A stretch of 64,000 nt of DNA from Salpingoeca rosetta. Taxonomy: Eukaryota > Protista > Choanoflagellata. Below, in pieces: positions 13,461-24,486 of the stretch. Below the pieces are notes generated by a model that had not been told where the DNA came from, did not search any database, and saw only the letters and a program-made list of their open reading frames with translations. A program made the position numbers and the translations under genes. The stretch is taken from the NCBI GenBank assembly GCA_033442325.1, contig JAWQFM010000027.1, positions 129,844-193,843 of the forward strand, read 5' to 3'. Position 1 is the first letter of the stretch; each line of letters starts with the position of its first letter.

Positions 13461-15170
13461 TTAAGTTGTTGTTGTTTTTAAGTTGTTGTGGTTTAAGTTG
13501 TTGTTGTTGTCGTCGTCGTCACGTTTTGCGACCTCGCCTTGTGTCCAGTACAGTTTGGTGGACGTGTTGGTCCCTGGCACCACGCGTATGCTGTGTTTGA
13601 GCTTACGCCATGTCCTCACAACCACCACGCCCACCACCGCCGTGTCCCCCCCCCTGTAGATTCTGTACTGCACACTGAACACGCACAAGGTCGACATGAC
13701 GCGGCTGCTCGGCGGCCAGATTGGCTTGGACGACTTTCTGTTTGCACACGTCAAGGGCCAGAGCAAACCCGTCAAGGTCGTCAAGGACGGCCCCGCGCTC
13801 GGCCTCACCATCTCCGACAACGGCGCCGGCTACGCCTTTATCAAGAAGATCCGCGACGACAGCATCATGTCCCGCGTGAACGACGTCAACGTTGGCGACC
13901 ACATCTCCAACATCAACGGCACAGACCTCACCGGCTGCCGCCATTTTGAGGTTGCACGCATGCTCAAGGAGATCCCCATTGGCTCCGAGTTCACCCTGAC
14001 CGTTGTTGAGCCCAAGAAGGCGTTCGGTGAGTGTGTGTATGTGAGTGTGTTGGTTCGGGAGCGATTTGAACGTATTGGCGTTCATCACGGTTTATTCCGT
14101 GTTGTTGTTGGTGGCGGCGGCTCGATACGCGAGATGAAAGGCCTCTTGTTCCGCGTCTTGTTGTTTTTGGTTTGGTGTCACAGTCCCTGTTTGAGCTTTG
14201 TATGCCACACGTCTTGTCAGACACTCACCCATGGACACACATACACACACATACACACACATACACATACACAACCACACACACACACACACACACGAAC
14301 ACACACACACACACACACCACACCTCCTCATTCCCACTGTTGCAGATGAGGTTGCGGGCATGAAGCCCCGCGGGCAGGCCTCTGGCACTGGCGAGGTGAA
14401 GGCCGGCGCCGGCAAGAAGACGCTGCGCATGAAGCGCGATGGCAACGCCGTCGTCGAGGACGTGGTACGTAGCCGAGGGTGTTGTGGACTGTTGTGTGCA
14501 AGCGTTGGCAAGGTGTTTGGGAAGACGGTTCAGGGTGAAGAGGAAACGCGCACAGCAGTTATCGCAGCATGCCCGTGCCTTGCTCTGTTGGTGTGACGTG
14601 AGTGAAACACAGCCGCTTGCTCTCATGTTTGCCGTTTGCCATCACCATCTCACCTCGCCATACACACGCCACCACACACGTCTGTTGCTCCTTGCCACCT
14701 TCTCTTGTCCTCAACCACGTGTAGCCAACGGATGCTGTTGTTGAGGTTGTGAACAAGATTGATGATCTTCTTGAGAACTTTGTTGGCATTAAGGACCAGG
14801 AGCTGTCCACCACCATCTACGACCTTGCCAAGGCGTCCAAGGAGGCTGACCTCTTTGCTGGCCAGCTCGACGAGCAGCTTGCAGACTTTGAGTTCCCTGA
14901 CGACTTTGTCCTCGACGTACGTCTCTCTCCTGTTGACACTCACGCCACCCTCTTGCCTGTTTGTATGTGTGCGTTTTGTTTGTATGTGTGCTGTCTTCAT
15001 CGAGGCAAACCGAGACTGTGGTGTGCATGTGTTGTGTTGTGTGTTAGTGTTCGTGTGCAGTGATGCCTGTTGCTTGTCCTGTTGCCAATTGAGTTGCTCA
15101 CGTCACGCGCTGTGCTGTGTAAACCTGCGCTCACTCCTGCGTTTAGGTGTTCGAGATGGTCCACAAGTAA
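13130..15170 (+). CDS. GIPC: PDZ domain-containing protein GIPC (GH1-PDZ-GH2)
   Basis: [84 protein letters not shown] and [13 protein letters not shown] are hallmark GIPC sequences. Five exons. The 3' end could extend if AA|GTAAGC at ~15166 is a donor. Confidence 0.93.
13317..13510. repeat. (GTT)n repeat in GIPC intron 1
   Basis: Direct inspection. Confidence 0.95.
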
Positions 15171-16078
15171 GCAAGCACTCGGCTTGTCTGATGGTGCTGA
15201 CCTAACAACTACCCAACCGGTGGCCTTCCCCTTCTTCCTCTCCTCTTGCCCCTTTTCCTCTTCCTTGTGTTCCTCCCCCCAACGTCCCCAAATCACTTCT
15301 CCTCTTCCTCCCTCCTCCTCTCCCCCTTCCTGTTCGCCCTTCGCTCTCTTTGAATCGTATGTGTCGTAGTGCGGCGTGTGCGCATCATGTTGCTCGGTTG
15401 TTGGTCTTGTGTGCTGTGTGAGTTGTGACTAGCACCTTTCGTCCTGTGCGGAGTGCCGTCGTGCGTATGTGACATGATGTTTCTGAGCAATACAAGCACA
15501 AACAGACGCCGATGCAGTGTGCGTGTAGTGTGTGCGTGTGTGCGTGAGTGTGTTTGTACTGTTTGTTTTTCTGTGTGCGCGTGTTTGCGTAGGTGTGTGA
15601 GTGCGTGTGCGCCTGTCTCTATCCTCCTGCAACACTATCCCACAACACCCCCCAAATCCCACAACACCCCACAGCGCCAAATAGGCCAATGAGATGAGAG
15701 CAAAAATTGATTAATTTTCAAGTTTTTGTTTTGTTGGTGGTGTGGAGAGGAAAAACAAAAGAGCACCAGCCAGCAGCGGATACCAACAAAGCCCAAAGGC
15801 CCTGCCAGCTTCTTGTCAACAACATCCGCAACACCCACAACACACGAGGACTGTCGTTGAATACACAAGCACACTGTGTTTGGGGGGTTGCTCACTCTCT
15901 TGTCACCCACTCAAGCGACAGGCAGATAACCACGTTCTCTCACAACCTGTTGAGCTGCTATCGGGTTTTGTGGCACATCAGCCAGTGATTGTCCCGTTAC
16001 CATCATCCATCAATCACAACGCCGCCACAACAGCTGCCAGTGTTGTTGAGTGGGAAGTGACGTCCAACCTGGGACGCA

Positions 16079-18260
16079 ATGTCGACGACAAGCAGCAGCA
16101 GCAACAGCGCTGCCTCCTCTAATGGCAGCGATGGCGATGCGCTGTGGAAGGCGGAGTACGCCATCCACGCCAAGACACACAGCAGGCTGCCTTTGGAGAA
16201 AGACGGACGTGTCGGTGGCGCCGTCTGCCGGGCCATCTTCACCAAGAGCAAGCTGCCCAATGCCACCCTCGGTACCATCTGGTGCGTTCCCTGCCTGCGT
16301 GTGTGTGCATGTGGTGTGTGTAGTGTGTGTATTTTTTTGCGTGTCGGTGCGTGTGTGTATGTGTGTGTGTGTGTGCATGTGTGTAGTGTGTGTTTGTGTG
16401 TACATGCGTGTGTAGATGTGTGTGTGTGTGCATGCGTGCGTAGATGTGTGCGTGCATGTGTGTGTATGTGTGTGTACATGTGTGTAGTGTGTGTTTGTGT
16501 GTCCATGCGTAGCGTGTATGTATGTTTGTGTGCATATGCATGCGTGTAGTGTGCCTGCTCATGTATCTGTGTTCGCGCACGCTTGTGTGTCTGCGTGTCC
16601 GTCTCGGTGTCTGCCTCTGTTTTTGTGTCCCTCCATGTGCCAGTTGTCCGTTTCGTGTCCAATCGCACTGCTTTGCGCTTTCTCCGCCCTTGATTACGTG
16701 CCTACGTGCCTGTCTTGCTCGCAACATCGACCATGCCCACCCCACCCCTCTCACCACGCTCATTCTCGCCACCCTTTGCTCAGGTCGCTGGTGGATGTGG
16801 ACCATCGTGGCGGCTTGACCAAGGAGCAGTTCATTGCTGCCATGTTCCTCGTGACCGATTGCGTGAGTCTGTATGTGTGTGTGTGTGTGTTTGTGTGTGA
16901 GTCTGTATGTGTGTATGTGTGTGTTTGTGTGTATACGTGCGCGTGGTATGTGTCTGTGTGTGTGTATGCGCGCGCATGTGTGTCTGTACATGTGTGTGCA
17001 CACGCGCACCACTTCATGTTTTGTCATGATGCTGGTGGGTGATGCTTGATGCCATGCTTCGCGCGCGTGCAATTGGTTACTAAATCACTTGCCTCCCCTG
17101 ATCACGCACGCCGTGTTGTCGATACGCCTGCACCGATTTGAAACCGTCACAGATGCGGGGCAACAAAGTGCCGTCGACGCTCCCGCCAAACTTGCAGGCC
17201 CTCGTGACGGGAGCTGCAGCGCCGCCCGCCACCAACGGCACCAAGCACGACCATTCACACAGACAACAGCAACGGCAACAGCAACAACAGCAACACCAGT
17301 TACAGCAGCTACAGCAGCAGCAACAACAGCAACAACAGAAGCCTGCATTCCCCGACGTTCCTGAAGGGGTATGTGTCTGTGTGTACGTGTGTGCATGTGT
17401 ATGCGTGCCTGTTGCGTTCCCTCCGTGCTCTTCTTCAACACAACAAGCGAGACGCAAGCACACGCGCGCACTGATCAATACCCTTGCTCACACGCCAATC
17501 ACACACACACACACAATGCGCAGCTGAAGGCAAAGTACAGGCAGATGTTTGCCAAGCGCGACACGGACAAGGATGGCTTCCTCTCCTCAAGCACTGTCCA
17601 CAGCATCCTCAAGAAGGCCGCGGTGCGCTTTCTTTTGTTGCCTGTAAATGTGTGTGTGTGTGTGCATAGTTGTGTGTGTGTGTGTGTGTGGGGGGGGGGG
17701 GGGTTATGATGACTCCTTCTCTCGTCACCTGATTCCATTCCACCCTGTCTTTGTCCTGCCCTACAAACTCACAACGACCACCACGCCACCACCACCACCA
17801 CCACCACCACCATAACTGTGCCCCGACGTGTAAACAGCTGTCGCAGCCCGTGATGGCGCGCATCTGGGAGCTGAGCGACGTGTCACGCGATGGCAAGATG
17901 GACGTGGGCGAATTCATCGTCGCCATGCACCTGTGCACGGTTGCGCGCATGTCATCGCTGCCGCTGCCGGGTAAGCTGCCGCCAAACCTGATGGCGGTGG
18001 TGGAGATGGAGCGCCCGGGGCAGCACGCAGCAGACATTGTCCGCCTTGCCGAGGAAAAGGCAAGGGCACAGGCGCAGCAGCACCAGCACCAGCAGCAGCA
18101 ACAGCAGCAACAGCAGCAACAGCAGCAACAGCAAGTGGAGCAGGGAGTACCGCGACGGGATGAGGCAACAGCAGCATCACTGCCACCGCCATCGGCTGCA
18201 CCGACCATCCCAACCCGCCCCTCCGCGTCCGAGCTCGCAATGTGCCAGGACACCGACGAC

Positions 18261-18292
<32 letters not shown>

Positions 18293-20158
18293 GGAGGAGG
18301 AGCGCAATGCACGACGTGATGGTGGTGATGATGAGCATGGTCGTGGTGCCGCCGAAACGAACCAGCACGACGGCGTCTCTCATGAAGCCGCCGTGCCTGC
18401 AAGCAACACCGATGCTGCACAAGCTGCTGAACAGACACACGCAGCGCCATCGGAGAAGCGGCCGTCCGAGCAAGACGACACGTTTCCTGCCACGTCGCCC
18501 TACGCAGCCCCAAGCGTGCCTGCCCGGCCCGGGAGCAGAGATTCAAATTTGGCGGCACATCCGGCTCGCCTTCGCCGCCGTGCATCGTCAAGCGTCAGCT
18601 TCTCAGAGGACGTACGTGTGCGCGCGTGTGAGAGTGAGAGAATGAGAGAGTGTGCGTTCGTGCTTGCGTGTGCATGTGTGCGCGTGTGCATGTGTGCGTG
18701 TGTTTGCGTCTTGTTTGACGGGCATTGAATCATCCGCGCTCACCTCAGCTTTTGCTGTCAATCCACAACTCTTCAACCCACCACATCACATTACCAGGTT
18801 GAGGTTGCGTACACGTATGCGCAGGGCGAGTACGAGCGTGGGGAGGACGTGGACGTCGAGCGAAACTTCATCGAGTCGGAACTCGAGGTATTCATCATGA
18901 TGATGATGGTGATGGTGATGATGATGATGATGATGATTGCTTCGGCTGTGTTCTTCTCACCAACTCGTGCATGTGCACATGTGCGTGTGCGTATCTGTGT
19001 GTGTTCAGGCGCAGCAAGAAGAGCTGCAGAAGGAGCGGGAAGAGTTTGAGAAGAGAATGGCTGAGATCAGACAAGAGGTACGGGGCGCTGGTCAATGACG
19101 AATGTGTCAGTGTTGTTGTCATTGTGTCGCTGTGGCGAAGCTGTGCTGTATTGTCGCTGTTGTCGGTGATGTTGTGGTCGTCGTTCACTGCACATGGAGC
19201 AAGATGCCTTCATTCACACTGCACTACGTGCGCATGCGTGCGTATGTGTGCGTGCGTGTGTTAACAGGAGGAGGGACGACCACGCCGCGTGATTACGTTT
19301 TCGTTCACGGGCGAAGAGACGGCGACAGACGAATACTCCGAAGACGACGAGCAAGCCAGAAGGGAGGAAGAGGAAGAGAGGAGGAAGCAAGCAGCAGCAG
19401 CAGCAGCAGAGGAGGAGGAGGAGGAGGCCGAAAGGACGAGGCAGGCGGAACAGGAAGAGAGGCAGAGAAAGGCAAAGGAGGAAGCCGAAGAGGAAGAACG
19501 GGAGAGGAAGGAGGAGGAGGCAAGGAAGCAAGCTGAAGAGGAGGAGGCAGCCAAGAAGCAAGCTGAGGAGGAAGAGGCTGCCAAGAAGCAAGCTGAGCAA
19601 GAGGAAGAGAGGAAGAAGAAGGAAGAGGAGGAGGAGGCTGCCAAGAAGCGAGCTGCAGAGGAAGAGGCTGCAAGGAAGCAAGCTGAAGAAGAGGCAGCCA
19701 AGAAGCAAGCTGAGCAAGAGGAAGAGAGGAAGAAGAAGGAAGAGGAAGAGGCTGCAAGGAAGCAAGCTGAGGAGGAGGAACATGCAAGGAAGAGGAAAGA
19801 AGCTGAGGAGGAAGAAGCCAAGCAGCGTGCTGCTGCGATGGCCTCAGAGCCAACAACTCCCGTCAAGCCTCCCACCGCCACAGCCACCACCACCTCTGCA
19901 GTCACCCCAGCCACACCCGTGACACCAGCGGCTGCAACCTCCACAGAGACACCAACGGGCAGCGCGCTAAACACGCCCATCACGTTTACGCCGCTGTCGC
20001 CCATGTCAGCCATGTCTTCGCCACGTGTCTCTCTCGACTCTTCCGCCATGCAGGCGGACCTCCAGGTGCGTGTGTTTGCGTGTCTCGACTCTTCCGCCAT
20101 GCAGGCGGACCTCCAGGTGCGTGTGTTTGCGTGTGCCTGGGTGTGTGTACGTGTGTTG

Positions 20159-20220
<62 letters not shown>

Positions 20221-20307
20221 GTGATGATGAAGAAGATGATGATGCTGCCTTTGCGTTCACGTACGAGCACGTCGAAGTCGTTACTGACTCCTCATCTCCA
20301 CTCCACT

Positions 20308-20383
<76 letters not shown>

Positions 20384-23300
20384 ACCCCACCGTACCAAAC
20401 AACACCACCATGCTGTGCACCGCTTTGCAGGCGCGGCTTGCGAAGGAAGGCGAGGATCGGCAGCGCAAGTTGGAGGAAAAGCGGCGGCAGCGGGCGGAGA
20501 GGCGCAAGCAGCGTCAGAAGGAGCGAGAGAGCGCACAGAAGAAGCACGAGCAGACGCTGCAGGTAGGAGCATGGAAGTGGCAGTCGTTGTGGTAGTAGCA
20601 GCGGTAGTGGTGTCTGCATTGTTGCGTGCGCACGTGCATTTGCTCTGTGACAGCTATTCTTGAATCATCCTCCTCTCTCCTTTCTTTATTGCTCACTTGT
20701 ACAACCTTTATCCTTCCGTCATGTATACATTTCCTTCCCCCACCTTCTCCATCTACTCCACCTGCTCCCCCACCCCTTGCAGGCGATGACTGGCAAGTCT
20801 CGCCGCCACAGTGCGCCTGTGACGCCCGCGAAGACAGCGACCAGCACGGCCCCAGTCATCATCTCCCCAACGCCGTCTGCGCGCGCCAGTGTGGGCACGC
20901 TGGGGCGCTCCCCGCTCCGGCAGCCGCTTTGGGAACAGCCGGGCGAGACGCACAAACTGGCGGAGGAGGAGAAGGAGGAGCAGGAGCAGGCTACACAGCG
21001 CGAGGAGAAGCCAGCTGTCGAGCAGAAGCAGCCGCAACAGCAAGAGCAGCAAGAACAGCAAGAGCAGCAAGAACAGCAAGAACAGCAAGAGCAGCAAGAA
21101 CAGCAAGAACCACAACAGCAGAAGCAGCAAGGGCAGCGGGAGCAGGAAGAACCTGTTGCGGAGGTGAATAAGCAGGAAGAGCCTGTTGCGGAGGTGAATA
21201 CGCAGGAACAGCCGCCACTGTCGACACTGCCAGTTCCGCGCGCACATCGCAAGCAACAACAGCAACTGCAGCAGGAGAAGCCGCAGGAACAAGAGCAGCT
21301 GCAGCAGCAGCAGGAGAAAGACCAAGAGCAGCAGGGGCATGAAGCACAAACGGATGTTGAACACAAGCCGGAGGAAGAGGATAAGAAGGCGAACCAGCCC
21401 GAAGAAGAAGCAGAAGAAGAAGCCATGAAGCAGCATGAAGCCGGCGCGAAGGATGCATCCCGCCTCGCTCATCGCGAGCAGCAGGCAGCGACAGCACGTA
21501 GCGATACAGGAACTGCGGACGATTCGCTACTGGATGAGCAGCTGCAGTCGATTGCGGCCGAGGAGGCAGAGGTGGTGCGGTTTGAGGCAGAGGCAGCAGC
21601 GCGGCGCGAAGCCATCATGCGGGAACGTGAAGAGGAGCAACGCGCATACGAGGAAGCCCAGCGGCAGCGCGAGCGGGAGGAGGAGGAGAGGCGCATGAAG
21701 AGGGAGGAGGAACAGAAGGCAATGCTGCAGTCGTTTGTGGCCAAGCAGCGGCAGCAGGCACCGTCGCCACGGGCACCCGTCTCTGAGGACGAGCAGCGCA
21801 AGCGGGAGGAGATGAAGAAGAAGATGCAGGAGGACGTACAGCGGCGACGCAGCAGTCTCACGCGCACGGCGGCACTGCAGGAGGCACGCGTCGCTGCCAA
21901 GACAAGGGCAGCTCCACAGGTGAACGACCCAGAGCACAAGGAAGAGAAGGCGGTCGAGGAGCAGGAGACGAGGCCGACAGTGCAGCGTGAGCAACAGCAG
22001 CCGCAGCAGCAGCGGCAGCAACAGCACCAGCAGGAAGAGCGACGGGAGTTCTTGCCTGCAAGCACGAGTCCAGCCAAGGCAGCATCGCCTTTGCCAAGCA
22101 AGACAGCCGCTGCCGCCTCTTCGACCACCGCCACCTCCATGCCGCCTGCCTCGTCGTCGTCGTCATCATCATCGACACCAGCCAAGGTGGGCACCATCCC
22201 CCAGTGGAAGCTTGATCTGATGGCTCGCAAGGCGGCGCGGCGAAGGAGTCAGGAGCAGCTTGTGACACCACCACCACCACCGTCACAACAGCAACAGCCG
22301 TTGCAAGCGACCCGACATGCTGCTGCTGCCACAACACCAAGCACTGCTGCTAGTGTCGACTCTGGTGCTCCAAGCACGCAGTCACCGCCACAGCAGCAGC
22401 AACATCAGCAAGAGCAGCAGCAACATCAGCGTGACTGGCGGGACCAGCCTGAGGAGTGGGTTCCACCCAGCCTTCGATGTATGTCATAAATGATGTTACC
22501 ACTGATTGGCTGTTTGCTTGGCTTGTCTGTTCCATGATTGCCGTGGTGTGCGTGTGTGTGCGCGCGCGCGTGTGTGTGTGCTTGTACTTTGTCTTTTGCT
22601 GTTTGTGTGTTTTCACACACACACACACACACACACGCACACACACGCACGCACACACACAACCCTATCTGCTGCAGTCATGCATGAACAGCAGAAGAGG
22701 CAGCAGGAGGAAGAAGAGCAACGCCAGCGCGAGCATGAACAGCGCGAACGTGAACAGCAGCAGGCACGTGAAACAGCCGCCACATCCCCTCCACAGGGCC
22801 ACCACCAAGCAGCAGCAACAGCAACACAACAGCAGCCACAACAGCAGCCACAGCAGCAGCAGCCGCAGACGTCGCTGCGTGGTGTGCGGGGCCCGAGCGT
22901 GCGTCGACCAGCGGGGATTGTTGGGGCAACCGGGCCTGTTGTCCCCTCTGCAATGCCCAATGTGCCCAAGGAACAGCTCGTGCAGCAGGCTGAGGAGCGC
23001 GCAGCCGCACTCGAGAGGGTACGTGCGGGTGGACTTGAAGGCCTGGTGTGTGTATGTTGTGTGTGTATGTTGTGTGTGTGTGTTGTGTGTGTGTGTGTGT
23101 ATGTATGTGTGTGTGTGTATGTGTGCGCGTGCACCGCTCGCTTTCCACCTCGCACCCCTCCCCTCACGCTTCTTCCATTGTTATCACCACCACTCACCAC
23201 CACCACAGGAGCGGCAGGCTGCAGAGTCGGCAGAGGCGCAGATGCGGTCTGGTGGGCTCGGGCTGCGGGCACGCATGGCCATGTTTGGTGGAGCGTCAAC

Positions 23301-23437
23301 TGCACCCACATGGAACCAGGAGCCACGCACACTCGCCTCCAAATCGCCTCGCAGGCTGTCATCCTCATCCGCCTCTTCCGCCACAGCACCCGCCACACAC
23401 CAACACCAGCAACAGCAGCCGGCGACAACAACACGAA

Positions 23438-23476
<39 letters not shown>

Positions 23477-24486
23477 GGCGGCGTCCATCATTCACTGCTG
23501 CTCCCCCTCCTGCTGCTGCATCATCAACATCACAGTCCCGACGAACGAGCACAGATGCGTCTGCCCCAAGCGTCGGTGGCGTCGGCGGCGGCGGCGGTGG
23601 TGTTGTTGCTCGGTGGGCAGCTGCCATGCGGCGGCGCAGTGGTGACATCCCCGTTGAGGATGCCAAGCCTCCACAGCATCAACACACCCAGCACCAGCAG
23701 CAGCGTATGCCATCGTCGCCGCCGTCGTCGTCGTCAGCGTTGACATCGACAGCCCCGCACGGTGCACCGCAGCCGGCGACCGTGTCACCCACCGGCCGCT
23801 TCAGCCGGGGTGGCAGCCTCAACGCCGTCCCACCAACCACACAGCCACCACCTTCATCAGCACCACAGCAGCAGCAGCAGGGGCAGCAGGGGCAGCAGCA
23901 GCAAAGGGAGGAGGAGGAGGCAACAGCTTCGAGTGGTAGTAGCGGGACCCGGTTCCGCGGTGTGATGGATCGCATGAAGATATTTGGTGGTGGCAGCGAC
24001 AGTGCCGTTGTCAACAAACCACGACGCAGGCTGCAGCGCACCCCTTCATCATCAGGCACAACAGCTTCAATACCAACGACAACAGCAGGAACAGCAACGT
24101 CGTCCTCGCCTCGTGTTGGTGGTGGCCCAGCGCGCACGCCCGCTGCCTCCACAACAACAGCGGCACCCGCACCATCGGACACTGCGTCGCATGTGCCGTC
24201 ATCATCCCCTGGGCAGACTGGTGGCGGTGTGCTCGGGCTGGCAGCGCGGTTTGGCGGCGTGTCCACCACATCGTCAGCAGCATCGTCGGTGCCAGGCAGT
24301 GGGCGGTCGTCACGCCAGGTGTCGCGCAAACCAAGCTTCACAGCTGCCGTGTCCTCCGCACAGTTCCGGCAGCACCAGCAGGGACCGAGGAAGGACGATA
24401 GTGGTGATGATGGGGATACGCGCCCGGCGTGGATGAAGAAGCGATCTGGCAGTGGTGCAAGATTCAGCACCATCTACAAGCGGTAG
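16079..24486 (+). CDS. Large (~1,900 aa) scaffold: two EH domains, PP1-docking-like module, long charged coiled coil, low-complexity C-terminus
   Basis: Twelve exons join in frame: 16079-16281, 16784-16862, 17153-17368, 17524-17622, 17838-18611, 18798-18887, 19009-19077, 19268-20065, 20431-20562, 20783-22478, 22678-23018, 23209-24486. EH1: FTKSKLPNATLGTIW|SLVDVDHRGGLTKEQFIAAMFLV. EH2: LSQPVMARIWELSDVSRDGKMDVGEFIVAMHL..LPGKLPPNL. Confidence 0.8.
19500..19825 (+). repeat. Coding tandem repeat (EEEEAAKKQA-type units)
   Basis: Repeated AAGCAAGCTGAG/GAGGAAGAG blocks encoding a charged helix. Confidence 0.85.
20033..20134 (+). repeat. Perfect 51-bp tandem duplication spanning a splice donor
   Basis: ctcgactcttccgccatgcaggcggacctccag|gtgcgtgtgtttgcgtgt occurs twice. 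Confidence 0.95.

What the first reader, a model, noticed from the sequence alone, without database searches (positions are those of the whole stretch)
18560..19320. Neurabin/Phactr-like PP1-docking module hidden in small exons of an EH-domain protein
Seen: splicing 18611 to 18798 gives RRRASSSVSFSED|VEVAYTYAQGEYERGEDVDVERNFIESELE|AQQEEL. A second, canonical RVxF match (RRVITF) follows at ~19283. Known, from my recollection of these families: neurabin/spinophilin have KIxFS..I.VF.TYS.EDYDR.NE.VDP.....EYELE, and Phactr has RFSDYVEVA...YDR, i.e. the RVxF-phi-phi-R string that remodels PP1 specificity. Inference: a PP1 regulatory subunit that uses EH domains instead of PDZ or RPEL modules, which would target the phosphatase to endocytic sites. 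I know of no described EH + neurabin-motif architecture.
Basis: partly seen in the sequence, partly recalled or inferred. Interest (0 to 1): 0.8.

Follow-up and report, generated by a model that had tools for sequence, protein, structure and literature searches.

The report
EH-domain protein with PP1-docking string
A choanoflagellate gene for a large endocytosis-type scaffold protein carries, just after its two EH domains, a short stretch that matches, residue for residue at the known contact positions, the segment by which animal neurabin/spinophilin and Phactr proteins grip protein phosphatase 1; binding is likely but unproven, because I could get neither relatives nor junction reads.

Summary
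A 12-exon, all GT-AG, 1,924-residue gene (window 16079-24486, + strand) joins 18611 to 18798 in frame and gives the quoted peptide. RRVITF lies at 19283-19300. The second EH domain and the V-S-F motif share one exon, so that link does not depend on splicing.

Evidence for a PP1 dock:
- **PDB search:** the junction peptide hit only spinophilin from its PP1 complex, aligned in register from V-x-F to E-L-E, with 20 of 51 residues identical.
- **Motifs:** V452-S-F454 is followed by V-E-V-A at Phactr1's spacing, then a Thr matching spinophilin T461, then Y-E-R and E-D-V-D.
- **Shuffles and real-protein controls:** the score of 64 beat 2,000 shuffles (best 57) and 150 real EH/coiled-coil proteins (best 45).

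Evidence that keeps it open:
- The PDB E-value is only 0.7, and a neighbouring segment hit influenza PA at E 0.2 by chance.
- The W motif is unclear.
- No orthologue was found.
- The read-laying run failed, so no junction reads exist.

Verdict: probably (about 0.55) a PP1-docking string of the RVxF-phiphi-R type in a new EH-domain setting. It is not a neurabin, Phactr or intersectin, since no PDZ, RPEL or SH3 domain is present. This makes it a new variant of a known kind, of moderate interest.

The parts
16079..24486 (+). Whole gene: 12 exons, 1,924 codons plus stop. Exons: 16079-16281, 16784-16862, 17153-17368, 17524-17622, 17838-18611, 18798-18887, 19009-19077, 19268-20065, 20431-20562, 20783-22478, 22678-23018, 23209-24486.
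   Evidence: Assembled by hand and checked. Every intron is GT-AG, the frame is continuous, and there is a single terminal stop.
16136..16862 (+). EH domain 1 (about residues 20-94), split by intron 1.
   Evidence: Residues 40-108 align at 40-47% identity to EH domains of many library proteins. Pfam did not call the exon-1 half on its own.
17524..17996 (+). EH domain 2 (about residues 167-252), exon 4 plus the start of exon 5.
   Evidence: Pfam EH scores 2.1e-8 on exon 5, with EF-hand/EH hits on exon 4. The closest matches, at 46-52% identity, are intersectin-like proteins.
18570..18611 (+). End of exon 5: basic run L-R-R-R-A-S (a Kemptide-like basophilic kinase site), then the non-canonical RVxF-type motif S-V-S-F (V452, F454) and S-E-D.
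   Evidence: V-S-F-S aligns with spinophilin I-H-F-S.
18798..18887 (+). Exon 6 (30 residues). It holds the phiphi strand V-E-V-A (18798-18809), T463 and Y464, the Arg motif Y469-E-R471 (18831-18839), acidic E-D-V-D (18843-18854), and the start of a helix ending in E-x-E-L-E.
   Evidence: This is the only [YFW][DE]R in the protein.
19009..19077 (+). Exon 7 (23 residues): the charged helix continues and aligns with the spinophilin helix that follows the string.
19283..19300 (+). Second, canonical RVxF motif R-R-V-I-T-F (residues 516-521).
   Evidence: the only match to both the strict and the Hendrickx-type RVxF patterns. Alone it is not beyond chance (P 0.17-0.37 in shuffles).
19310..19837 (+). 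E/A/K-rich coiled-coil-like region (about residues 525-700), built of 117-nt tandem repeats.

Best explanation
The gene encodes a 1,924-residue scaffold. It has two N-terminal EH domains, a disordered linker, a roughly 50-residue PP1-docking string, a long charged coiled coil, and a low-complexity tail. I propose that residues 452-487 bind the PP1 catalytic subunit the way neurabin/spinophilin and Phactr1 do.

Proposed contacts, all inferred from the alignment:
- V452 and F454 enter the RVxF pocket.
- V458-A461 add a beta-strand to PP1 strand beta14 (the phiphi motif).
- T463 takes the pocket used by spinophilin T461.
- R471, stacked on Y469, salt-bridges PP1 D71 in the C-terminal groove.
- The following acidic helix (exons 6 and 7) runs along the substrate grooves.

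This would block part of PP1's substrate surface, while the EH domains bring the enzyme to NPF-motif partners. A phosphatase would then sit inside the EH endocytic/actin network. Budding yeast reaches the same end in trans, with Scd5-Glc7 acting on the EH protein Pan1.

The R-R-x-S site just before V-S-F, and the Ser inside and after it, make kinase-controlled docking plausible. The nearby canonical R-R-V-I-T-F could be a second or back-up anchor.

What is shown: the gene structure by sequence, the EH domains, and the in-register motif match. What is inferred: the splicing in vivo, PP1 binding, and the targeting role.
For: Gene structure:
- The gene model is clean, with GT-AG at all 11 introns.
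- EH2 and V-S-F lie in the same exon.
- Exons 6 and 7 have coding codon usage in frame.
- RNA-like runs hold the share of words expected for exon-only RNA.

Match to known PP1 strings:
- Of 177,635 distinct PDB sequences, only spinophilin from PP1 complexes 3EGG/3EGH is hit. It aligns from V-x-F to E-L-E with 20 identities and 7 similar positions in 51 columns.
- Spinophilin's own segment does not find Phactr1 in the same database, so this match is stronger than the one between two accepted members of the group.
- The contact positions named in the literature are all matched. These are the RVxF, the EVAD-type phiphi at the same spacing, Y-x-R (PMC7599070), and T461 (PMC6235537).

Statistics:
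- The score of 64 compares with a best of 57 in 2,000 shuffles and 45 in 103,805 residues of real EH/coiled-coil proteins.
- The exon-6 segment is the top hit in the whole window.
- A V-x-F at the right spacing adds an independent factor of 0.004-0.025.
- A literature-shaped composite pattern occurred in 0 of 5,000 shuffles of this protein.

Precedent: Scd5-Glc7 regulating endocytic EH-protein complexes in yeast (Zeng et al. 2007, cited in PMC4775215).
Against: - The PDB E-value is only 0.7. A neighbouring 41-residue segment hit influenza PA endonuclease at E 0.19-0.5, which is clearly chance, so hits of this strength do occur at random.
- By my scaling, the alignment score alone is expected about 0.4 times per proteome.
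- The first RVxF lacks the basic residue directly before V. No Pro-hydrophobic W motif follows R471; F481 is only a candidate.
- No Pfam family matches the peptide.
- No orthologue or relative with the string was found. The four protein searches and two metagenome scans were all blank for it. Conservation, the best test for a short motif, is therefore missing.
- There are no junction reads.
- The region is very acidic and leads into a coiled coil, a composition that inflates such matches.
Confidence: 0.55

Rival explanations
1. Chance resemblance. The segment is just the acidic, disordered lead-in to the coiled coil of an EH scaffold and does not bind PP1.
For: - The PDB E-value is 0.7, and an equally strong but plainly meaningless hit to influenza PA was found next door.
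- About 0.4 matches of this score are expected per proteome.
- This 80-residue stretch is 23% Glu.
- No Pfam family matches and no conserved relatives were found.
- The first RVxF is non-canonical and the W motif is missing.
Against: - The match is in register at every literature-defined contact position, across two exon junctions.
- V-x-F at the right spacing is an independent event with probability 0.004-0.025.
- The score is 19 raw units above the best of 150 real EH/coiled-coil proteins and above all 2,000 shuffles.
- The protein's only strict RVxF lies 62 residues away.
Confidence: 0.3
2. PP1 is docked only by the canonical R-R-V-I-T-F. The upstream neurabin-like string is irrelevant, so this would be an ordinary single-RVxF PP1 interactor with no groove remodelling.
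For: R-R-V-I-T-F is the only match to both RVxF consensus patterns in the protein. The upstream motif S-S-V-S-F lacks the usual basic residue.
Against: One strict RVxF is expected by chance in 17-37% of shuffles. Nothing after R-R-V-I-T-F resembles a phiphi or Arg motif. Phactr1's own motif, LIRF, is also non-canonical and still critical (PMC7599070).
Confidence: 0.1
3. Intersectin-type linker plus an extra exon. V-S-F-S-E-D and the following charged helix would be the conserved EH2-to-coiled-coil junction seen in intersectins (V-T-F-E-D-K-R-K-E-N-F...E-L-E-R-R-R). Exon 6 would be a lineage-specific or alternatively spliced 30-residue insert with no PP1 role.
For: - The best EH2 matches are intersectin-like proteins that carry V-T-F-E-D...N-F...E-L-E at the same place after EH2.
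- With exon 6 left out, the junction aligns to them with scores of 40-52.
- Exons 6 and 7 are both phase 0-0, so either could be skipped without a frame shift.
Against: - Those scores come mainly from E/K/R-rich coiled coil and are lower than the spinophilin score of 64.
- BLAST found no match beyond residue 260 to any of the 150 proteins.
- No SH3 domain is present.
- This reading does not explain the Y-x-R, T-Y and E-D-V-D identities.
Confidence: 0.1

Closest known systems
Neurabin-1 / spinophilin (PPP1R9A/B) PP1-binding domain
   Same: It is the only PDB family hit. The alignment is in register over RVxF (I-H-F-S against V-S-F-S), the beta-strand, T461, Y462, Y467-D-R469, E-D-V-D (identical), and the E-x-E-L-E helix. 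That gives 20 of 51 identities. As in neurabin, the string lies upstream of a coiled coil.
   Different: There is no PDZ domain after the helix, no F-actin-binding N-terminus and no SAM domain (Pfam). EH domains are present instead. Neurabin picks its substrates mainly through the PDZ domain (PMC12185105), so substrate choice here would have to work differently. There is one residue less between F and the strand. Val replaces the Pro and Glu the Met of the P-M pair that I take, from memory, to be spinophilin's W position.
Phactr1-4 PP1-binding C-terminus (RVxF-phiphi-R-W string)
   Same: The RVxF is non-canonical. F-S-[D/E]-x-V-E-V-A has the same spacing as Phactr1 LIRF 519-522 and EVAD 527-530. 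The Arg motif is Y-[D/E]-R (PMC7599070).
   Different: The strand-to-Arg spacing is three residues longer, which is the neurabin spacing. There is no P-W motif, no RPEL repeats, and the string is not at the C-terminus. A PDB search with the 33-residue N-terminal half found nothing.
Yeast Scd5-Glc7 acting on the Pan1/End3/Sla1 EH-protein complex
   Same: PP1 is brought to the EH-domain endocytic and actin machinery (Zeng et al. 2007, cited in PMC4775215).
   Different: In yeast the PP1-targeting subunit (Scd5) is a separate protein without EH domains, which uses a simple RVxF-type motif (my recollection). Here the dock would be built into the EH protein itself.
Intersectin (EH-EH-coiled coil-SH3 x5)
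   Same: It has two N-terminal EH domains followed by a charged coiled coil. It gives the best EH2 identity, 46-52%. A V-[ST]-F-[E/S]-[D/E] element sits at the EH2/coiled-coil boundary.
   Different: There are no SH3, DH, PH or C2 domains. There is no detectable similarity beyond residue 260.

Membership tests
RVxF-phiphi-R-W string PP1 cofactors (Phactr, neurabin/spinophilin, PNUTS, PPP1R15) | RVxF-type motif with V/I and F/W two residues apart | tested here: met
   V452-S-F454 aligns with spinophilin I449-H-F451. It is non-canonical because Ser, not Lys or Arg, precedes it, but Phactr1's LIRF is non-canonical too.
RVxF-phiphi-R-W string PP1 cofactors (Phactr, neurabin/spinophilin, PNUTS, PPP1R15) | phiphi beta-strand a few residues after the RVxF | tested here: met
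   V458-E-V-A461 starts four residues after F454. This is the same spacing and the same E-V-A letters as Phactr1 EVAD 527-530. It aligns with spinophilin I-Q-V-F.
RVxF-phiphi-R-W string PP1 cofactors (Phactr, neurabin/spinophilin, PNUTS, PPP1R15) | Arg motif: Arg with a stacking Tyr two residues before it | tested here: met
   Y469-E-R471 aligns with spinophilin Y467-D-R469 and has the form of Phactr1 Y534/R536. It is the only [YFW][DE]R in 1,924 residues.
RVxF-phiphi-R-W string PP1 cofactors (Phactr, neurabin/spinophilin, PNUTS, PPP1R15) | W motif: a hydrophobic residue, usually after Pro, 4-8 residues after the Arg | tested here: inconclusive
   No Pro-hydrophobic pair follows R471. V477 and E478 occupy the aligned positions, and F481 at +10 is only a candidate.
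RVxF-phiphi-R-W string PP1 cofactors (Phactr, neurabin/spinophilin, PNUTS, PPP1R15) | Nanomolar binding to the PP1 catalytic subunit through these motifs | not testable with these tools
   This needs a complex prediction or a binding assay. The structure tool folds single chains only.
Neurabin/spinophilin (PPP1R9) | PDZ domain directly after the PP1-binding helix | tested here: not met
   Pfam scans of ten of the 12 exons (the two shortest, exons 2 and 9, were not scanned) found no PDZ. The helix runs straight into a coiled coil.
Phactr | RPEL actin-binding repeats, with the PP1-binding string at the C-terminus | tested here: not met
   There is no RPEL hit in Pfam. The string is at residues 452-487 of 1,924.
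Intersectin | Five SH3 domains after the coiled coil | tested here: not met
   There is no SH3 hit in the ten exons scanned.
EH-domain network proteins | EH domain (an EF-hand pair that binds NPF motifs) | tested here: met
   Pfam EH scores 2.1e-8 on exon 5. Both EH regions align to many EH proteins.
Phostensin/taperin (PPP1R18, TPRN) | Match to the Pfam Phostensin or Phostensin_N families | tested here: not met
   No Pfam hit was found for exon 10, for 22100-22477 or for the C-terminus, even at E up to 10. Only the short P-x-W-[KM] motifs are present.

The most novel reading that the evidence does not exclude
This would be a fifth family of RVxF-phiphi-R-type PP1 cofactors, found in the closest unicellular relatives of animals. 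In it the extended, groove-occupying PP1 string is built into an EH-domain scaffold, so PP1 becomes an integral, kinase-switchable part of the EH endocytic/actin network. The first half of the string is Phactr-like and the second half neurabin-like. That would point to a single ancestral opisthokont PP1-binding module from which the Phactr, neurabin and Bni4 strings descend.
Probability: 0.4. Interest if true: 0.6.

Novelty: new variant of a known kind. Interest (0 to 1): 0.45.

Why it matters
Only four protein families are described as using the extended RVxF-phiphi-R-W string, which wraps PP1 and reshapes its substrate grooves (PMC12185105). In each family a different neighbouring module chooses the substrates: PDZ, RPEL/actin, WDR82 or G-actin.

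An EH-domain version would add a new way of choosing substrates, namely through NPF-motif partners. It would place PP1 inside the endocytic network by a direct fusion, where yeast uses a separate subunit. Because it combines Phactr-like and neurabin-like features in a choanoflagellate, it would also bear on how these animal PP1 regulators arose. The organism is a tractable model, so the idea can be tested directly.

Tried and rejected
**RNA evidence**
No junction reads were obtained.

**Orthologue hunt**
- A word search with exon 5 found nothing among proteins of 142-451 residues.
- A word search with the 75-residue junction peptide found nothing among 41-131 residues.
- A word search with exon 12, given through a stop-free reference, found nothing among 372-1,185 residues.
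- The exhaustive representative search with exon 5 gave 692 hits, all through the EH half. None of the 150 listed carries the string, and none matches beyond residue 260.
- The only close relative, P0012 at 82% identity, lies on a 597-bp Tara metagenome scaffold that ends inside the exon.
- Two metagenome scans were blank. Exon 6 alone was too short for that tool.
- The full-length 1,924-residue product could not be searched. It has no reference, and I did not type it. The length window of the word search therefore never reached full-length relatives.

**Family scans**
- Pfam on ten of the 12 exons and on the junction peptide found only EH and EF-hand. There was no Phostensin, PDZ, SH3 or RPEL.
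- The Atlas look-up of exon 12 gave nothing usable.
- PDB searches with exon 6 alone and with the 33-residue first half were blank.

**Rejected idea**
- I considered that the region is an intersectin-type EH2/coiled-coil linker. The similarity is weak and driven by composition, so I kept it only as a minor rival.

**Paper not held**
- Ragusa et al. 2010 (PMC2924587) is not in the library. Spinophilin contact residues therefore come from later papers.

Full report
**1. What is in the sequence**

The window is eukaryotic. GC content is about 55%, and introns are short, 121-502 nt in this gene. Earlier notes of this scan name the genome as the choanoflagellate Salpingoeca rosetta. I did not verify the name myself.

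On the + strand I assembled a 12-exon gene, 16079-24486. Every intron is GT-AG, the frame is continuous, and there is one terminal stop. The product has 1,924 residues.

Exon 5 ends at 18611 with V-S-F-S-E-D, followed by donor GTACGT. Exon 6 (18798-18887, 30 residues) begins V-E-V-A-Y-T-Y and ends E-S-E-L-E. Exon 7 (19009-19077) begins A-Q-Q-E-E-L. R-R-V-I-T-F lies at 19283-19300 in exon 8.

One structural point does not depend on splicing. Exon 5 alone holds both the second half of EH domain 2 and the V-S-F motif. The EH-plus-RVxF link is therefore written in a single open reading frame.

**2. Are the small exons real?**

I have no junction reads. I kept those letters away from every search tool afterwards.

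Two indirect lines support the model:
- Exons 6 and 7 have the codon usage of this gene's other exons in the proposed frame. Their scores are +28.6 and +47.1 bits, while no 90-nt intron window exceeds 6.3.
- Ten runs from four studies hold 0.52-0.57 of the sampled 31-letter words of 16000-21900. Three other runs hold 0.90-0.93. An exon-only transcript of my model predicts 0.558-0.572.

The word-share result fits spliced RNA as a whole. It cannot resolve the two small exons, which account for under 2% of the words. Both small exons are phase 0-0, so either could be skipped without breaking the frame. That remains open.

**3. What the protein is**

Pfam finds an EH domain on exon 5 (2.1e-8) and EF-hand/EH signals on exon 4. 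Residues 40-108 and 163-251 align to EH domains of many proteins. The exhaustive library search with exon 5 gave 692 hits, all through the EH half. The best EH2 identities, 46-52%, are to intersectin-like proteins with EH-EH-coiled coil-SH3 architecture.

Beyond residue 260 nothing in that set matches. Pfam finds no SH3, PDZ, RPEL or Phostensin domain in the ten exons scanned. The order of parts is:
- EH1 and EH2;
- a Q/E/A-rich linker;
- the string, residues 452-487;
- a charged helix;
- R-R-V-I-T-F, residues 516-521;
- an E/A/K coiled coil made of 117-nt repeats;
- about 1,200 residues of low-complexity sequence.

There are no NPF or DPF motifs, so the protein would read such motifs in partners rather than carry them.

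**4. The resemblance to PP1-binding strings**

A 61-residue junction peptide searched against all PDB chains hit only spinophilin from its PP1 complexes (3EGG, 3EGH). The alignment is in register, with 20 identities and 7 similar positions in 51 columns. The matched positions are:

| This protein | Spinophilin |
|---|---|
| V-S-F-S | I449-H-F-S |
| V-E-V-A | I-Q-V-F |
| T463-Y464 | T461-Y462 |
| Y469-E-R471 | Y467-D-R469 |
| E-D-V-D | E-D-V-D |
| E-x-E-L-E | E-x-E-L-E |

The literature assigns roles to exactly these positions:
- the RVxF motif;
- the phiphi strand that extends PP1 beta14;
- the Arg that salt-bridges PP1 D71 and is stacked on a Tyr two residues before it (PMC7599070);
- the pocket taken by spinophilin T461 (PMC6235537).

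The first half, F-S-E-D-V-E-V-A, has the spacing and letters of Phactr1 LIRF 519-522 and EVAD 527-530. The second half has neurabin spacing.

The fourth element, the W motif, is not evident. No Pro-hydrophobic pair follows R471, and F481 is only a candidate.

These cofactors form a small described group of four families (PMC12185105).

**5. Is it more than chance?**

For:
- The spinophilin 53-mer scores 64 against the spliced protein. Two thousand shuffles gave a mean of 34.6, a standard deviation of 4.6 and a best of 57.
- Across the six-frame translation of the whole window, the exon-6 segment is the best hit, 49 against 41 for the next.
- Among 150 real EH and coiled-coil proteins (103,805 residues) the best score is 45.
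- Spinophilin's own segment fails to find Phactr1 in the PDB, so this match is stronger than the one between two accepted members of the group.

Against:
- The PDB E-value is 0.7.
- As a control, I searched the neighbouring 41 residues that contain R-R-V-I-T-F. They hit influenza PA endonuclease at E 0.19-0.5, which is plainly a chance match of equal strength.
- Scaling, a score of 64 is expected about 0.4 times in a proteome of 7 million residues.

The local alignment score does not credit the V-x-F upstream, because a gap cancels it. A V-x-F at one of four allowed spacings has probability 0.004 with this protein's composition and 0.025 with a generic one. Together this gives roughly 0.002-0.01 expected chance cases per proteome.

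I read this as suggestive to fairly strong, but not conclusive. The second RVxF alone is not beyond chance (P 0.17-0.37).

**6. Conservation**

This is the test that would settle a short-motif claim, and I could not run it.
- Three word searches were blank.
- The exhaustive search found no relative with the string.
- Two metagenome scans were blank.
- The only close relative is a 597-bp marine metagenome scaffold that ends inside the EH exon.

The word search accepts only proteins of 0.55-1.75 times the query length. The spliced 1,924-residue product has no reference, so full-length relatives were never within reach. These blanks therefore say little.

**7. Mechanism proposed**

The string would bind PP1 as in neurabin and Phactr, occupying the RVxF pocket, beta14 and the C-terminal groove. 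That would exclude some substrates. The EH domains would bring NPF-motif partners close.

L-R-R-R-A-S, just before the motif, is a classic basophilic-kinase site. From general knowledge, Ser inside or after RVxF motifs is a known off-switch in other PP1 cofactors. Regulated docking is therefore plausible.

Yeast offers a functional precedent in trans. Scd5 targets Glc7 (PP1) to the endocytic machinery that includes the EH protein Pan1 (Zeng et al. 2007, cited in PMC4775215).

I found no paper that joins an EH protein with an RVxF string.

**8. Verdict**

The protein is not a neurabin, a Phactr or an intersectin, because a defining domain of each was tested and not found. It probably works like the first two at its PP1 interface; my confidence is about 0.55. 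I class it as a new variant of a known kind, of moderate interest.

Noticed in passing
window 20032-20134: A perfect 51-bp tandem duplication (2.0 copies, 100% match) spans the end of exon 8 and its donor site. This gives two equivalent in-frame donors 51 nt apart. Using the second would add 17 residues.
   Followed up: partly
window 19478-19797: The E/A/K-rich coiled coil of exon 8 is built of 117-nt (39-residue) tandem repeats at 80-83% match. This points to recent internal expansion.
   Followed up: partly
window 22185-22250 and 24421-24450: There are two P-x-W-[KM] motifs: I-P-Q-W-K-L-D-L-M-A-R-K at residue 1293 and R-P-A-W-M-K-K-R at residue 1905. From memory they resemble the paired N-terminal motifs of the PP1 regulators phostensin and taperin. 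Pfam gives no Phostensin hit even at E up to 10. The first motif is the subject of another note of this scan.
   Followed up: partly
window 23209-24486 (exon 12): A short motif ending in F-G-G occurs three times (R-M-A-M-F-G-G, R-M-K-I-F-G-G, A-A-R-F-G-G), and [RK]-P-S-F-T-A-A occurs twice, all in an S/T/A-rich tail. The word search and the Atlas found no relatives.
   Followed up: partly
window 13696-15063, + strand: The gene directly upstream looks like a GIPC-type PDZ adaptor: a PDZ-like open reading frame followed by a GH2-like C-terminal exon. I read this by eye only. GIPC is also linked to endocytic traffic.
   Followed up: no
window 16282-16783, 18612-18797, 18888-19008, 20066-20430: Introns begin with (GT/GTGC)n-rich runs and often end in CA-rich tracts. 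They also hold long triplet microsatellites, (ATG)13.7 at 18897-18937 and (TGA)28.7 at 20159-20244, as well as (AC)37 at 20309-20383. This agrees with another note of this scan on UG...CA intron arms.
   Followed up: no
window 19289-19360: V-I-T-F-S-F-T-G-E-E-T-A-T-D-E-Y resembles a stretch of influenza PA endonuclease (I-H-I-F-S-F-T-G-E-E-M-A-T, E 0.19-0.5 in the PDB). I take this as chance, and it served as a caution on weak E-values.
   Followed up: yes
L001 (Tara metagenome scaffold, 597 bp): An uncultured marine relative encodes the start of exon 5 at 82% identity. A CAG acceptor sits at the same place just before L-S-Q-P-V-M, so the position of intron 4 seems conserved.
   Followed up: partly
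P0050, P0124, P0039, P0141 (intersectin-like proteins): These proteins share a strongly conserved V-T-F-E-D-[KR]-R-K-E-N-F-x-K-G-Q-A-E-L-E-R-R-R element at the boundary between EH2 and the coiled coil. That is the same position as V-S-F-S-E-D in this gene. I do not know whether this V-x-F has any PP1 role in intersectins.
   Followed up: partly
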